The notes under the pieces: generated by a model
Seen by the model: the letters and a program-made list of their open reading frames with translations, nothing else
What the model was told of the DNA's origin: nothing
The model's database searches: none
Made by a program: the position numbers and the translations under genes
Source: Podarcis muralis
Lineage: Eukaryota
Length of the DNA stretch: 64,000 nt
Reading direction: 5' to 3'
Assembly: GCF_964188315.1 (NCBI RefSeq)
Contig: NC_135660.1
Span: 46,748,001-46,812,000 of the forward strand
In this document: positions 44,765 to 51,200 of the stretch, in pieces
Layout of the letters: each line of letters starts with the position of its first letter
How positions within the stretch are numbered: position 1 is the stretch's first letter

Positions 44765-44907
44765 NNNNNNNNNNNNNNNNNNNNNNNNNNNNNNNNNNNN
44801 NNNNNNNNNNNNNNNNNNNNNNNNNNNNNNNNNNNNNNNNNNNNNNNNNNNNNNNNNNNNNNNNNNNNNNNNNNNNNNNNNNNNNNNNNNNNNNNNNNNN
44901 NNNNNNN
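44765..44907. other. Assembly gap (N run)
   Basis: 143 N bases. Confidence 1.
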
Positions 44908-46423
44908 AGTGTAAGTAACATTGAGAAAGCAAAGGTTAGCAATGGACATGTTTCTAGACCTCAGCTTGGCCATAGGACTTGTCTGCCAATTTCCTTGTGA
45001 GATTTCGGTAGGAGAGTTACCAACAAACATGACATTGATCACAAAATATAAACGCCACTCAAGCTAGGCATTTTTAAGCCTATAACTCACATAAATGGAT
45101 TGACCATGAAACAAAATGTGGCATGTCAAATTATATCTAGTAAGTACTGAAGCATCACAAATATGGCTTGAACTAACAACCCAGGTAAATTAAATATAGT
45201 GTTCTCAATTGGGGGGCTGTGTCAAATGTTTGCTATGTGGGAAGTGCCATTATGGATTGGGAGAGAACAGGTGGACTGGAAGTAAGAAACAGTGATGTCA
45301 ATCAGGCTTTTGTTCCACCAAAATGGACACTGACATCTTTTTCCCTTCCCATTCCATTCTATTGCTGCTTGATAGGCAGAAGTGCTGCTTTTGTTGTTGT
45401 TGTTAGAAGCTTTTACTTAATACAACATATTTGCTCATGTAAATCCTTCCTCATCACACAATCTTTCCCCCCACCCAGAGCCTAAATATTGATAAATCCC
45501 CATTGTTGCATCAAACTGTATAATGTGCTTACCAGATGCTAAAAACACTTACAATTTGGTGGAAAATATTTTTTTGGCAGACAGCAACATTTTGATATCA
45601 CCATCAGTTTCTTTTCATTCTTGTCCAAGGACAGAAAATGAATTTCAGACCAAGCAGAAACTGAATAAAAAGTCAGGGTCATATCTCCCTGTTCCTTAGG
45701 GAATAGTCTTATTTCTTCCTTTTCTACTCTCTTTCCTATATTATGGAGAAACTTGTATTTCAGATAGACATATGGCCTGGATTCTCAGTGACTGTAAATT
45801 GTGTCCCCACTTGGCATGCGGCACACTCTGCTCTCCATGAGCACTATAGATGACTATTATTTAACATTTACTATTCATGAGCTGTACAGAATGAAGACAT
45901 GATGTGTTCTCTGCTGGGAAAGTTATTGATCAAAGGACACAATCCTCCACCACATTTTATATATAATGAATTGGGGGAGGGTGTGAATAGGATCTGTATA
46001 AGATCTTGCATAGCCCCCATTCATTTCCATGGGATTTATGCATGATTTATTGGCACACTGTACTCAAAGTAAGGTGGGGAAGGGGAGGTCTGAAAAAGAT
46101 GTACATTTTCTGTGCTCTGGATGAGTACAGAAGAAAAAAGTATAATGTACAGTCCAGTATAAATCTGGTCTATATGCCTATCTGCCTATATGCAACAGGT
46201 TACCTAGGTCAAGAAGCAATTATGGGTACAAAATTCCTCAAATAGGAAGGGGTAGGATGTGCTTTTTGGCTTTTAGTAAACATATAGCATTCTGGGTTGT
46301 CCTATTTACATGTTACTCTCAAGTAGGGCATAGCCATGTTGACTTTGGGAAGGGGTTGTGCTTTTATCCCTTGTCCACACCATTGGGTCTTCTCCGTGCA
46401 ACAAGAATGTGTGCACGCAGTTG

Positions 46424-48230
46424 TTTGTGGATCGAGGGCCCGACCCCCGCTATGTGAAATAAACACACAAGGACACGTGATGTAAGGTTAATGGGCAAGA
46501 AAAGGCCACAACTTTATTGATTACAGCAGTGAAAAGGTATTGGCTTAGGCATTGGATGACTATAGGAGGTGGGTTTATTCAACAGTAGGTGGAGCCTGTT
46601 GATGCCAATCCAACTATAGGCTCACCCCCTGATGTCACCGAGGGTCGTGCCATGGCCTCCCGCCAAGCAGGCATCGGACGGAATACACGACCGCCAGATT
46701 CCTTTAACGGAATAACCCACGGTAGATAGCATAGGCGATGGCCACACCTAGCCCTTGACACAGCACAACACATGAATCCAATGCCTAACCTACCCACCAA
46801 TACCACAAAAGTTGTGACGATTGCTACGAGGTAGGCGAAAAAACCAAAAAGCCTAATGCCAAATGGAAAAATTCCTACCAGGCCCCCCAGACAACCGGGG
46901 CGACCAACCTAAGGTCCATAGCAAGGCCAAAAAACCTAGACCCTGAGCTAAATGGGAGTGGAGGGTGGGTGACTCGCTGAGGGACGACGACGAATGAGGA
47001 GGAGGCGGAGCTGGCCCCGCAGCATTAAGCTGCTAAACACGCCCCCCGGAGACACCTGGTTGGCTGCCTCTGGTGGGCATGGGCGCCAGCCAGGTGAAGA
47101 GGGGCGGGGGCTAAGGCCCCCGGCCAGGAGGCGGAGCTCGGGCTCCCGCCCACAACCACTCCCCTCTCTTCCAGGGAGGAGAGTCTTTGTGGATCGAGGG
47201 CCCGACCCCCGCTATGTGAAATAAACACACAAGGACACGTGATGTAAGGTTAATGGGCAAGAAAAGGCCACAACTTTATTGATTACAGCAGTGAAAAGGT
47301 ATTGGCTTAGGCATTGGATGACTATAGGAGGTGGGTTTATTCAAGAGTAGGTGGAGCCTGTTGATGCCAATCCAACTATAGGCTCACCCCCTGATGTCAC
47401 CGAGGGTCGTGCCATGGCCTCCCGCCAAGCAGGCATCGGACGGAATACACGACCGCCAGATTCCTTTAACGGAATAACCCACGGTAGATAGCATAGGCAA
47501 TGGCCACACCTAGCCCTTGACACAGCACAACACATGAATCCAATGCCTAACCGCCACCCGAGCCGCAAAGGGGCTCGCCGCCAATACCCTCACAGCTGCA
47601 ACCAATCCCTAATGCTACTAATGACGCTGTCCAACCAGATGTCATTCCCAATGTCTGTTAGGTGAACTCCGTCATTCCGGTACAAGGCTTGGTCGCCAAT
47701 CCGGATACGGTCATGAGAGATGACTCAGCCATACCAAAAGTGCACCCAACGGGCTATTGCACGATTCAAGAGTTTCCTGGATTTTTCAATGGCCATACAG
47801 TTCTGCACACCGTGCCACACAACTCTCTTCAGGAAGGAGGACCAGAACACCGTTGTTTCGGGACACAAGGCAGCAATCTCATCCAAATCTCTTTTTATGT
47901 GCCACGACAAGTCCACACTTCTTCTGCTAACAAGGTCATTTCCCCCTAATTGAAGGATAAGGGTGTCAGGAGGGCCAAACGCGGCAACTCTCCCTCTCAG
48001 CAATGGCATAAGCAATGCCTCGTCTCGACGACGAATGAGGAGGAGGCGGAGCTGGCCCCGCAGCATTAAGCTGCTAAACACGGCCCCCGGAGACACCTGG
48101 TTGGCTGCCTCCGGTGGGCGTGGGCGCCAGCCAGGTGAAGAGGGGCGGGGGCTAAGGCCCCCGGCCAGGAGGCGGAGCTCGGGCTCCCGCCCACAACCAC
48201 TCCCCTCTCTTCCAGGGAGGAGAGTCTTTG
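46424..48230 (-). mobile_element. Ngaro-type tyrosine-recombinase retrotransposon (DIRS order), internally deleted
   Basis: Split direct repeats on the minus strand: A1 (48230-48026, truncated), SGNH fragment, B1 (47552-47186), A2 (47189-46791), B2 (46790-46424). B1/B2 differ at 2 of 367 bp and the shared A part at 3 of 205 bp (counted by eye). No TSD; TTTG core at each junction. Confidence 0.88.
47590..48025 (-). pseudogene. SGNH/GDSL hydrolase-domain ORF remnant of the Ngaro element
   Basis: ...FGPPDTLILQLGGNDLV (block III GxND)... one in-frame TGA at 47727-47725, then VISHDRIRIGDQALYRNDGVHLTDIGNDIWLDSVISSIRDWLQL* (block V DxxH). Block I (catalytic Ser) is deleted. Confidence 0.85.
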
Positions 48231-51200
48231 CAGAGAAATTCACATGCACAACCACTTACTTGCATGCTGAGGTTGCACAAGTTTTCATGGAGGCCTCACA
48301 TTCAAACAGGTGTTCATGCATCAAAATTTATCTGCAGACAACCACACACAACACACAGTTGTTGCAGTGAGAAAATCTGATAGTGGAGTTAAAGGCTAGA
48401 GATTCCACCTGTCTGGAATATTTCAGTTAAGTCAGTACCGTACTTAGGGCAGGACCATCCCAATGTTGTTAGATTCCAAACCCCATTGGTCATAGCCAGC
48501 ATGACCAATGCACAAAAATAATGGGAGTTGTAGTCCAGGAACATCTGGAGATTTGCACGTTCCCTACTCCTGATTCAGCCTAACTATCTAGAAGGAAGTT
48601 CATAGAAGTCAAGTTCCCCATTTCTTCCACCCTGTAAAGCCCCCTGCGCCCCTGCAAAGCTTATCCAGAGGGTATTGAGGGGTGTCTGTCTGATTCTGGG
48701 TGGTTCTGTCCTCCCACAGCGGTATTCCTGGGTACCATCCCACATTTTTAGGAGGGTCTCCTGGTTATCTGTAGAGGTTTTCTGGGGCAACCAGGTGGCT
48801 AATAGTGGGGGGAGTGAAGAAGAAATATCTGCCCATGAAATTCCTTCTGTACACATATCTAAGGATCCAAGAAATATTCTGTTATTACCTCCTCTTTCCT
48901 GACCTAATTGGCAGTTCTGCCAAACCAAACTTTGATACCTCCACAGCTGAAAGATTCATTAATGTATAAAATCAAATGAATGTAGGGGGAAATCCAAACA
49001 CTTAGAATAGTACCAAGAAATTTGTCACACAGCACAGAAGCTATCAATATCTTTCCCTAGCTACCTAGGAATTTATTTATTTATTTCTCATGGAAACCAC
49101 TGATAGTGATAAAACCTTCAGATATCCATCTAGAGGAGAAACAGTCATTTAAAATGTACTAAGATTAACATCCCGGCAATTAGTTTTCCTGTGGTGTCCC
49201 TTTACAATCATCATTAAACATGTTCAGGGAAAAGTATCTTCAATCAATGCTCTTTTCTCAAATGCTCCTCTTTTCTTAAATATAGTGGCAGTTTGATTCT
49301 TCTTTCTCAATGCATCTTCATCCTAAATGCTATGTATACAAGTACAAATTAAAAAGAACTTCATCAAGCACTACTTTTGCACCCAAATGTATATGAATCT
49401 CTGACTCGGGTATCAGCCCTAACATAAGCAACAGCAGCAGCCCCAAATACTCAAACTGCTGGGCTAGATCAGGTTATCTCATTTAACAGTGGTCAGTAAG
49501 AGAACCCTAGCAAATTGACAAGCATGATATACTGGAGATAACATCCTTTGTTGTTTATCCCCATTATTCAATACTGAAAACTAAACAAGAAGACTGCATT
49601 GTAAGCTGTCATGGTTCTTATACATTGATAGATCTGTCCATTGATAGATCTTTCCCCAAGGATAAGAACCAGTTTACATACTATACCTGCTGCCACATGG
49701 AAAATGCATAAAATAGCACACTCACAAGCATATTTAATCAGAAGTAAGTCCTACAGGGTTCAATGGATCCTACTCTCTAAGTAGGTGTAGGATTTCAACC
49801 TTAATCACTTAGCCACAGAAGGATTGTCATCAAAACAAAACAAAACATGGTGAGCCATGCAATGGCTAGACAAGTGGTGGGACCAATTTTCTCCAGATCA
49901 ACAGAAATGATTTGTAGTAGCATAGAGCCAATTTTGTGGTAGTGGTTAGCCATTGAACATGGCAGACATCTTATCACATGGAGCAGCTTTTCTACAGAGA
50001 AGTCATTTCCAACTTAGCATCCTCTAGATGTAATGGACCACAATTTTTGATGGATGATTGGACCATCATACTTCCATTTACTATATAGTGACCTTTCCCA
50101 ACCCAGTCCCAGGGCCACAATTCTTGTCAGCCCTAGTCAGCATGGAACATCTGGAAGGCAAAGGGTTGGGAAAGGCTACTGTAGAGTAAATGGAAAAAGC
50201 CGCCAAGGGGCTATTACCAGGTCGGGCAGAAAGCTTTTGAAAAGGTACTGGTAGCTCTATCATGAGGCCAAATGAGGCATTTGCCTCAGGCAGCATGTGA
50301 AGAGGGTGGCAAATTTGTTGCTTTGCTTGTTTGCCTTCCTGTCCCCTTCAACCACCCAGCTAGTGCCATCCACCTAGGTGTTTTGTTTTGTTTTTTAATT
50401 TTTAAAAATATTTTGTTGGAAGCTGCCCAGAGTGGCTGGGGAAACCCAGCCAGATGGGTGGGGTATAAATAATAAATTAATTTTTGAAAATTAAGTAGAA
50501 GTATATGGCTCTCTGGAATCATTTCCTGCTCTCCAGTATGAGCCTCACTTGCTCATCCCTTCTTGTTAAATGCTTTGCTACTGCTACCAAGACAACAATG
50601 CTGGCCCTGTCTCAGTCTCAGTCTCTCCTTCCCCACTACCTCACTCAGTGCTGGGAGATCCTTCAGAGCAAAGCATTATGGGTAAGGTGGCCCAGAAAAT
50701 TGCCTGCACTGTCAGTTTTCTCACCATGGTTAGAAATCCTTTTTAAAAATTAGTTAAAAACTTGAAAGTTACTAAAGTAACTTTTGACAAGTTTTTGTAA
50801 TAATGAAAAAAAGAATAGTTAGCCACTTCCTGGCCATCTTGTCCAGAATGCCTGCCCTTCCTCATAGTGTAAAAAGGGGGAGGGGGCAGATGCTGAGATA
50901 TGGCCAGCACTGCCTCTGTGTCAGCAACAGCAACACAGTTAAGTGGTGAGCCATGGAGAGAGGACAAAGAAGGGGCAGAGATGCCCGCCTCAGGTAGCAC
51001 AATGCCTCATGTAACCACTGGACCACATTCCAAAGGATCCATCCACCAGTTACTCAGAATGATGAAAGATAATGTTCTGGGCCAGCTAGAATCAAGCTCT
51101 GCAGCAACTCCATTAAAATATATATGTTTCCCTTGTTCTATAAGTAAATGTCCTCCAGAATTAAACGACTATATTTCTGACATTTTTTATTTCAGTTTTT

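What the first reader, a model, noticed from the sequence alone, without database searches (positions are those of the whole stretch)
46424..48230. Young, internally deleted Ngaro-type retrotransposon with an intact split-direct-repeat architecture in SORCS1 intron 4
Seen: two interleaved repeat pairs that are not ordinary LTRs. B = 46424-46790 and 47186-47552; A = 46985-47189 and 48026-48230. On the minus strand the order is A1-internal-B1-A2-B2. Established: this order defines Ngaro elements of the DIRS order, which use a tyrosine recombinase. Inference: a large deletion fused the first 205 bp of A1 to the last ORF, removing gag, RT/RNaseH and the recombinase. Near-identical repeats and retained CpGs imply a recent insertion. 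It may be a mobilisable 1.8-kb non-autonomous family rather than a one-off deletion.
Basis: partly seen in the sequence, partly recalled or inferred. Interest (0 to 1): 0.75.

Follow-up and report, generated by a model that had tools for sequence, protein, structure and literature searches.

The report
Deleted, polymorphic Ngaro retrotransposon copy
This is a 1.8-kb gutted copy of a known kind of lizard jumping gene (a Ngaro retrotransposon), present in some wall lizards and absent in others, and the empty allele shows that it entered at a four-letter TTTG site without duplicating host DNA.

Summary
B (367 bp, 2 mismatches) and A (205 bp, 3 mismatches) lie at the stated coordinates. On the minus strand they read A1-internal-B1-A2-194 bp-B2.

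The 473-bp internal part is the C-terminal two thirds of an SGNH/GDSL hydrolase with one in-frame stop. It is 81-86% identical to Podarcis muralis gene models that join a tyrosine recombinase to this hydrolase. Sister models join reverse transcriptase to the recombinase. No DDE integrase was seen. This is the Ngaro layout described in amphibians.

New here: one DNA run carries both element-flank junctions. Two runs from other studies carry the empty site, which has a single TTTG. TTTG also sits at both element ends and once at the internal A/B junction. That is what conservative recombination at a shared 4-nt core predicts.

Other copies continue the hydrolase frame past the breakpoint, which has 3 nt of microhomology and no splice signals.

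Whether the deleted form is a mobilisable family could not be tested, and nothing found here speaks for it. The SORCS1 claim was not tested.

Earlier notes of this scan report many Ngaro copies elsewhere in this genome. This is an ordinary new member of a known kind, with a useful filled/empty pair.

The parts
48026..48230 (-). A1: outer 205 bp of the A repeat, the 5' end of the element on the minus strand. It is GC-rich with GC boxes and ends in the 4-nt core (TTTG on +, 48227-48230).
   Evidence: flank junction contig of X1 at 48204-48547
48026..48028 (-). Deletion junction. These three bases (CGA on +) belong both to A and to the hydrolase sequence of other copies, so they are microhomology. 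No GT..AG is possible in any phase.
   Evidence: Loose end at 48028 in X14 (table 7) continues the reading frame; alignment to P0001 starts at its residue 62.
47593..48025 (-). Remnant of the SGNH/GDSL hydrolase ORF, the last roughly 140 of about 200 domain residues. Block I (the GHS motif of relatives) is missing. There is an in-frame stop at 47725-47727 and the natural stop at 47593-47595.
   Evidence: (PF13472, E 8e-4, below cut-off); the stop is private to this copy (table 3, place 47727)
47186..47552 (-). B1: internal copy of the B repeat, starting 40 nt downstream of the hydrolase stop.
46985..47189 (-). A2, the part shared with A1. The B1/A2 junction holds a single TTTG (47186-47189), a copy of the presumed circle junction.
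46791..46984 (-). A 194-bp stretch between A2 and B2. It is most likely the inner part of a roughly 399-bp A repeat whose counterpart in A1 was deleted, and a probable 5' leader.
   Evidence: Colinear conserved blocks with the divergent solo unit at 38681-39489; no similarity to the internal part; sense-direction RNA reads of the family.
46424..46790 (-). B2: terminal B repeat, the 3' end of the element, with two minus-strand AATAAA (46513-46518, 46574-46579). The outer end carries the 4-nt core (46424-46427).
   Evidence: X1 contig 46000-46449
46417..46427 (.). Insertion site. In empty alleles 46423 is joined directly to 48227, leaving one TTTG.
   Evidence: tables 5, 5c and 8: X14 contig of 1768 nt and X12 contig of 3724 nt

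Best explanation
This is a single, internally deleted copy of a Ngaro-type (DIRS-order) tyrosine-recombinase retrotransposon of the wall lizard, lying on the minus strand. It entered this site recently enough to still be absent from other sequenced animals. The cDNA form, whose B-to-A junction carries one TTTG, recombined conservatively with a TTTG in the target. As a result the element is flanked by TTTG on both sides with no true target duplication (inferred from the filled and empty alleles). A deletion of several kb with 3 nt of microhomology joined position 205 of A1 to the middle of the last ORF, the SGNH hydrolase. It removed the rest of A1, gag, RT/RNase H, the recombinase and the hydrolase's catalytic N-terminus. 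The copy codes for nothing functional. It could move only in trans, if at all. It also lacks the 5' leader copy that the split-repeat replication model needs. I therefore take it for a dead copy and not for the founder of a family (inference). Whether the deletion arose during reverse transcription or after insertion is not known.
For: The repeats and their order are shown. The hydrolase remnant is shown. P0152 (593 aa, P. muralis) carries Phage_integrase followed by Lipase_GDSL_2 and is 81-86% identical to the window's two pieces. P0006, P0004 and P0005 show recombinase motifs directly before the hydrolase. The recombinase part of P0006 matches 182 proteins, many named xerD homolog with PF00589. 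P0156, P0163 and P0173 carry RVT_1 before the recombinase. Published Ngaro definitions give A1 at the 5' end and B1-A2-B2 at the 3' end, with an SGNH ORF after YR in amphibians (PMC9210276, PMC8547959). The empty site has a single TTTG in X14 and X12, and the filled junctions are present in X1. [quoted passage not shown] Contig depth over the hydrolase part is about 20-90 times the flank, and hundreds to thousands of times over the repeats. 469 contigs are at least 99% alike in X1. CpG o/e is 0.60 against 0.1-0.17 in the flanks.
Against: This copy itself has no RT or recombinase, so membership rests on relatives. The RT-YR-SGNH order is therefore pieced together from separate gene models. Pfam hits to Phage_integrase and GDSL are mostly below the curated cut-offs. 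SGNH domains also occur behind cold-shock domains in other long proteins. Canonical descriptions show A2 and B2 adjacent; here 194 bp lie between the shared part of A and B2, and I explain this by truncation of A1 without a full-length copy to prove it. TTTG on both sides is formally also what a 4-bp target duplication would give. X1 may be the animal the assembly was made from.
Confidence: 0.85

Rival explanations
1. The 1.8-kb form is a non-autonomous Ngaro derivative that is copied in trans by full-length elements, so several loci share the same A205-hydrolase junction. It would be analogous to SIRE, which derives from VIPER.
For: Both ends and the internal B1-A2 junction are intact. The insertion is polymorphic and the family has near-identical copies. 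Short derivatives of YR retroelements are known: SIRE (PMC6681497) and solo AB units (PMC8547959).
Against: No second copy of the junction was seen. The only informative loose ends at the junction (X14) belong to copies that continue the hydrolase ORF. The copy lacks the inner part of A1, which family RNA reads suggest is the transcribed leader, and so lacks the 5' homology that the split-repeat model needs. The in-frame stop and several other letters are private to this copy (table 3). However, the tools could not search the genome for the junction, so absence is not shown.
Confidence: 0.1
2. The interleaved repeats are not a split-repeat element. They would be a tandem or nested arrangement of two B-x-A units, arising from unequal recombination, from one unit inserting beside another, or from an assembly collapse near the gap at 44765.
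For: On the plus strand the structure reads (B-194 bp-A)(B-473 bp-A), with TTTG at all three boundaries. Solo units are very abundant. Complex patterns from nested copies are reported for TATE (PMC6681497).
Against: Empty alleles remove the whole 1803 bp in one step and leave one TTTG. The second 'unit' holds the end of the hydrolase ORF exactly where Ngaro has its last ORF before B1. The two A and the two B copies are equally similar (98.5-99.5%), as expected of one event. X1 contigs confirm both outer junctions.
Confidence: 0.04
3. The empty alleles are not ancestral. They would result from precise excision of the element by a recombinase acting on the two terminal TTTG sites.
For: Tyrosine recombinases are reversible in principle, and excision would also leave a single TTTG.
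Against: The empty haplotypes differ from the reference by about 1% in the flanks and by a 4-nt indel next to the site (tables 3 and 5c). They are therefore separate old haplotypes. Excision of DIRS-type elements has not, to my knowledge, been shown.
Confidence: 0.03

Closest known systems
[quoted passage not shown]
   Same: Both have split direct repeats, A1 at the 5' end and B1-A2-B2 at the 3' end, of a few hundred bp (A 236, B 152 in DIRS-53_XT). Both have an extra last ORF with an SGNH hydrolase domain after the recombinase. No methyltransferase was seen.
   Different: This copy is in a lizard. It has lost gag, RT/RH, YR and the start of the hydrolase. Its repeats are longer (B 367, A probably about 399). 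The A1/A2 and B1/B2 pairs are 98.5-99.5% identical, not 100%.
SIRE, the short element derived from VIPER in Trypanosoma cruzi (PMC6681497)
   Same: It is a short derivative of a YR retroelement made of terminal repeat material. It includes a short unique stretch between the A2-like and B2-like parts.
   Different: SIRE corresponds to A2-B2 only and is a high-copy family. The present element keeps A1, part of the last ORF and B1 as well, and is so far known from one locus.
Cafeteria burkhardae Ngaro elements and their isolated AB repeats (PMC8547959)
   Same: They have the A1-[ORFs]-B1A2B2 structure and are GC-rich relative to their surroundings. Solo AB units are scattered in the genome, as at 38681-39489 here and in the very high contig depth over A and B.
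   Different: They live in a protist host, are full-length at 6-7 kb, and have no hydrolase ORF described.
DIRS-1 of Dictyostelium and the circle-junction integration model (PMC7192593)
   Same: A short sequence at the junction of the element's ends is predicted to recur on both sides of a new insertion, one copy coming from the target. Here it is TTTG, with the empty allele to show it.
   Different: DIRS-1 has inverted terminal repeats plus an internal complementary region and a methyltransferase. The integration intermediate of Ngaro has not been studied experimentally.

Membership tests
Ngaro (DIRS order) | Split direct repeats: A1 at the 5' end and B1-A2-B2 at the 3' end, with A1=A2 and B1=B2 | tested here: met
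   The shared part of A is 205 bp. 194 bp lie between it and B2 and are read as the rest of A2.
Ngaro (DIRS order) | Encodes a tyrosine recombinase and not a DDE integrase | tested here: inconclusive
   It is absent from this copy. It is present directly upstream of the hydrolase in same-species relatives: P0152 (81-86% identical), P0006, P0004 and P0005. No rve hit was found in any model scanned. The Pfam scores for PF00589 are mostly below the cut-off, but 182 homologues include many with PF00589.
Ngaro (DIRS order) | Reverse transcriptase/RNase H upstream of the recombinase | tested here: inconclusive
   It is absent from this copy. RVT_1 precedes the recombinase in P0156, P0163 and P0173 of P. 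muralis. RNase H was not looked for.
Ngaro (DIRS order) | No methyltransferase domain (distinguishes Ngaro from DIRS1-like and PAT-like) | tested here: inconclusive
   No methyltransferase family appeared in the Pfam scans of the relatives, but these models are partial.
Ngaro (DIRS order) | Placement of RT and YR inside the Ngaro clade in a phylogeny | not tested
   No reference Ngaro, DIRS1 or PAT sequences were at hand.
Amphibian-type Ngaro with fourth ORF | SGNH hydrolase ORF after the recombinase, ending just before B1 | tested here: met
   The remnant at 47593-48025 ends 40 nt before B1. YR-SGNH order is seen in P0152 and P0006.
YR retroelements in general | Insertion without target duplication: a short core shared by the element's end junction and the target | tested here: met
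   Empty alleles with one TTTG (X14, X12). The filled allele has TTTG at both ends and once at the B1/A2 junction. This is one locus only.
Non-autonomous retrotransposon family | Several loci sharing the same internal deletion junction | not testable with these tools
   No eukaryotic genome search was available and read laying was limited to one call. The findings search by sequence was blank.

The most novel reading that the evidence does not exclude
The deletion was made at birth. Reverse transcription of a 5'-truncated or abandoned template jumped, by 3 nt of microhomology, from the middle of the hydrolase ORF to the internal A2 copy. It landed close to the point where the normal strand transfer that rebuilds the untranscribed outer part of A takes place. 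The copy would then be a fossil of the otherwise unobserved strand-transfer step of Ngaro replication. The same route could produce trans-mobilised short derivatives.
Probability: 0.15. Interest if true: 0.5.

Novelty: new member of a known kind. Interest (0 to 1): 0.33.

Why it matters
It adds little as a new kind of element. Ngaro elements with a hydrolase ORF are described, and this scan has noted many in the same genome.

Its value is as a clean natural experiment. It is a presence/absence polymorphism of a YR retrotransposon in an amniote, and both alleles can be read. It shows that the family was active within the history of the species. It also gives direct filled-versus-empty support for integration at a 4-nt core shared with the element's own end junction. 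That step has been inferred for DIRS-type elements but hardly documented.

The locus is also a ready PCR marker for wall-lizard lineages.

Tried and rejected
- **Internal duplication:** I tested whether the 194-bp stretch is a diverged copy of the internal region. It is not: the local alignment score is no better than shuffles.
- **Retro-copied spliced RNA:** I rejected the idea that the deletion is a retro-copied spliced RNA, as earlier notes on a Gag-esterase splice suggested. No GT..AG fits any of the four phases allowed by the microhomology. The junction also lies inside the hydrolase domain, not in front of it.
- **Pfam alone:** it leaves the ORF below threshold. PDB sequence search with P0006 found nothing. 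Rfam found nothing credible.
- **Long representatives P0012, P0020 and P0022:** they gave no Pfam domains. P0056, P0065 and P0086 carry cold-shock domains and are a different context for the esterase.
- **Findings searches:** searches by sequence, and for a deletion family, were blank. 'SORCS1' occurs in no note.
- **RNA run X23:** it gave only partial, mostly 90-95% alike reads, so there is no evidence that this locus itself is expressed.
- **Other Ngaro coding pieces in the window:** no RT or recombinase remnant lies anywhere in the window.

Full report
**Observation**

- B is 46424-46790 and 47186-47552: 367 bp with 2 mismatches.
- A is 46985-47189 and 48026-48230: 205 bp with 3 mismatches.
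- A and B overlap by four bases, TTTG, at 47186-47189.

On the minus strand the order is A1, 473 bp internal, B1, A2, 194 bp, B2. The element stands out from its surroundings. It has 55% G+C and a CpG observed/expected ratio of 0.60, against 37-41% and 0.09-0.17 in the flanks. Three of the five differences between repeat copies are CpG transitions.

**The internal part**

On the minus strand, 48027-47596 reads as the C-terminal roughly 140 residues of an SGNH/GDSL hydrolase. It is interrupted by one stop at 47725-47727 and ends at its natural stop 40 nt before B1.

Pfam alone gives only a sub-threshold Lipase_GDSL_2 hit (E 8e-4). The word search found a Podarcis muralis protein, P0001, that is 84% identical. 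The alignment starts at residue 62 of P0001, so the first block of the domain, with the GHS motif of the relatives, is missing.

**Link to a tyrosine recombinase and a reverse transcriptase**

An SGNH domain does not prove Ngaro by itself. The exhaustive search also found it behind cold-shock domains in other long proteins.

The link comes from the closest relatives.
- P0152, a 593-aa P. muralis model, is 81-86% identical to the window's two pieces. It carries Phage_integrase at 323-397 and Lipase_GDSL_2 at 456-577.
- P0006, P0004 and P0005 show the recombinase box II and the tyrosine region directly before the hydrolase.
- The recombinase half of P0006 has 182 homologues. Many are named 'integrase/recombinase xerD homolog' in lacertids, geckos and frogs and carry PF00589.
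- P0156, P0163 and P0173 carry RVT_1 in front of that recombinase.

The family order is therefore RT, then YR, then SGNH. No DDE integrase or methyltransferase appeared in any scanned model. This is the layout published for amphibian Ngaro-like elements: gag, RT/RH, YR plus an SGNH ORF, with A1 at the 5' end and B1, A2, B2 at the 3' end (PMC9210276; see also PMC8547959, PMC4157794).

The order is therefore pieced together from separate gene models. No RT or YR remnant lies elsewhere in the window.

**The 194-bp stretch between A2 and B2**

- It is not a diverged copy of the internal region.
- A divergent solo unit at 38681-39489 in the same window aligns colinearly with the whole B-194 bp-A block. 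The conserved blocks lie both in B and in the 194 bp.
- The stretch is therefore an integral part of the terminal unit.
- A short unique stretch between A2 and B2 is also known in VIPER/SIRE (PMC6681497), so a natural spacer is not excluded.

**Reads**

I laid contigs of three DNA runs from three studies, and raw reads of one RNA run, on 46000-48700.

- **Filled and empty alleles.**
  - Run X1 has contigs crossing both element-flank junctions (46000-46449, 48204-48547) and no empty form.
  - Run X14 has a 1768-nt contig that joins 46423 directly to 48227. Run X12 has a 3724-nt contig that does the same beside a 4-nt indel.
  - Both empty forms keep exactly one TTTG.
  - The insertion is therefore polymorphic.
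  - The empty haplotypes differ from the reference by about 1% in the flanks. That is similar to the 0.9% between the repeat copies, so the insertion is about as old as the split of these haplotypes.
- **Integration.**
  - TTTG is present at both ends of the filled allele, once in the empty allele, and once at the internal B1/A2 junction.
  - A 4-bp target duplication would give the same flanks. It would not explain the TTTG at the internal junction.
- **Copy number and private changes.**
  - Summed contig depth is hundreds to thousands of times the flank over A, the 194 bp and B, and about 20-90 times over the hydrolase part. This also holds in the runs that lack this insertion.
  - The genome therefore holds many solo units and tens of hydrolase-bearing copies, some at least 99% alike.
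  - At 47727 every contig in all three runs reads a different letter from the window. The in-frame stop is therefore private to this copy. It is a CpG-type change.

**The deletion**

In X14, contigs that match the hydrolase side up to 48028 then continue with other letters that keep the reading frame open (table 7). Other copies therefore carry the rest of the ORF.

The window matches those copies up to 48028 and matches A from 48026. The junction thus has 3 nt of microhomology. No GT..AG fits in any phase, so it is not a retro-copied spliced RNA.

I could not tell whether the deletion happened during reverse transcription or after insertion, or whether other loci share it. The one read-laying run does not resolve the junction, and no eukaryotic genome search was on hand.

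**RNA (tentative)**

The RNA reads are few, mostly 90-95% alike and mostly only partly on the stretch. They come from other family members. This locus is not shown to be expressed.

Their direction is consistent over B plus the 194 bp and opposite over the outer 205 bp of A. A contains GC boxes. This fits a bidirectional promoter in outer A, a sense start near the A205 boundary, and a sense end inside B near the two AATAAA. A sub-genomic transcript of this kind is what the split-repeat model requires.

If this holds, the deleted copy lacks the 5' leader and is unlikely to be mobilisable.

**Verdict**

This is a dead, internally deleted copy of a known kind of element, in a genome where this scan has already noted many Ngaro copies.

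What is worth keeping is the filled/empty pair with its single TTTG, and the evidence of activity within the species' history.

The SORCS1 label was not tested. 

Noticed in passing
window 46455-46909 versus 47001-47091 and 48093-48274: Family-level RNA reads of run X23 lie in one direction over B plus the 194-bp stretch and in the opposite direction over the outer 205 bp of A. This suggests a bidirectional GC-box promoter in outer A, a sense start near the A205 boundary, and termination inside B near the minus-strand AATAAA at 46513-46518 and 46574-46579.
   Followed up: partly
window 38681-39489: This is a divergent solo B-x-A unit of similar length (about 809 bp) on the same strand. It shares colinear conserved blocks with 46424-47189, some of them perfect over 25 nt. 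It begins with TTTG and ends with TTT.
   Followed up: partly
window 48457-48560: A short, very high-copy repeat lies about 230 bp from the element. Contig depth is about 3000 times the flank and RNA reads are abundant. It is probably a SINE.
   Followed up: no
window 47150-47225 (minus strand): The last bases of B plus the core can pair with a TTGTGG 40 nt inside A, around a second stem. DNA fold energy is -15.2 kcal/mol, z -2.5, and 4 of 200 shuffles do as well. This is weak, but it recalls the junction hairpin noted earlier in this genome.
   Followed up: partly
proteins P0008, P0009: These 400-430 aa models have a low-complexity, basic N-terminus joined directly to the SGNH domain, with no RT or YR. 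They are 46-48% identical to the window's hydrolase. They could be the spliced Gag-esterase products proposed in earlier notes.
   Followed up: no
window 46417 (run X12): The empty haplotype of X12 carries four extra letters (AAAC) just left of the insertion site. It is an indel polymorphism next to the target.
   Followed up: no
window 46808-46841: Dozens of contigs in all three DNA runs break away from the window sequence here (loose ends). Subfamilies of the terminal unit therefore differ by a replaced segment inside the 194-bp stretch.
   Followed up: no
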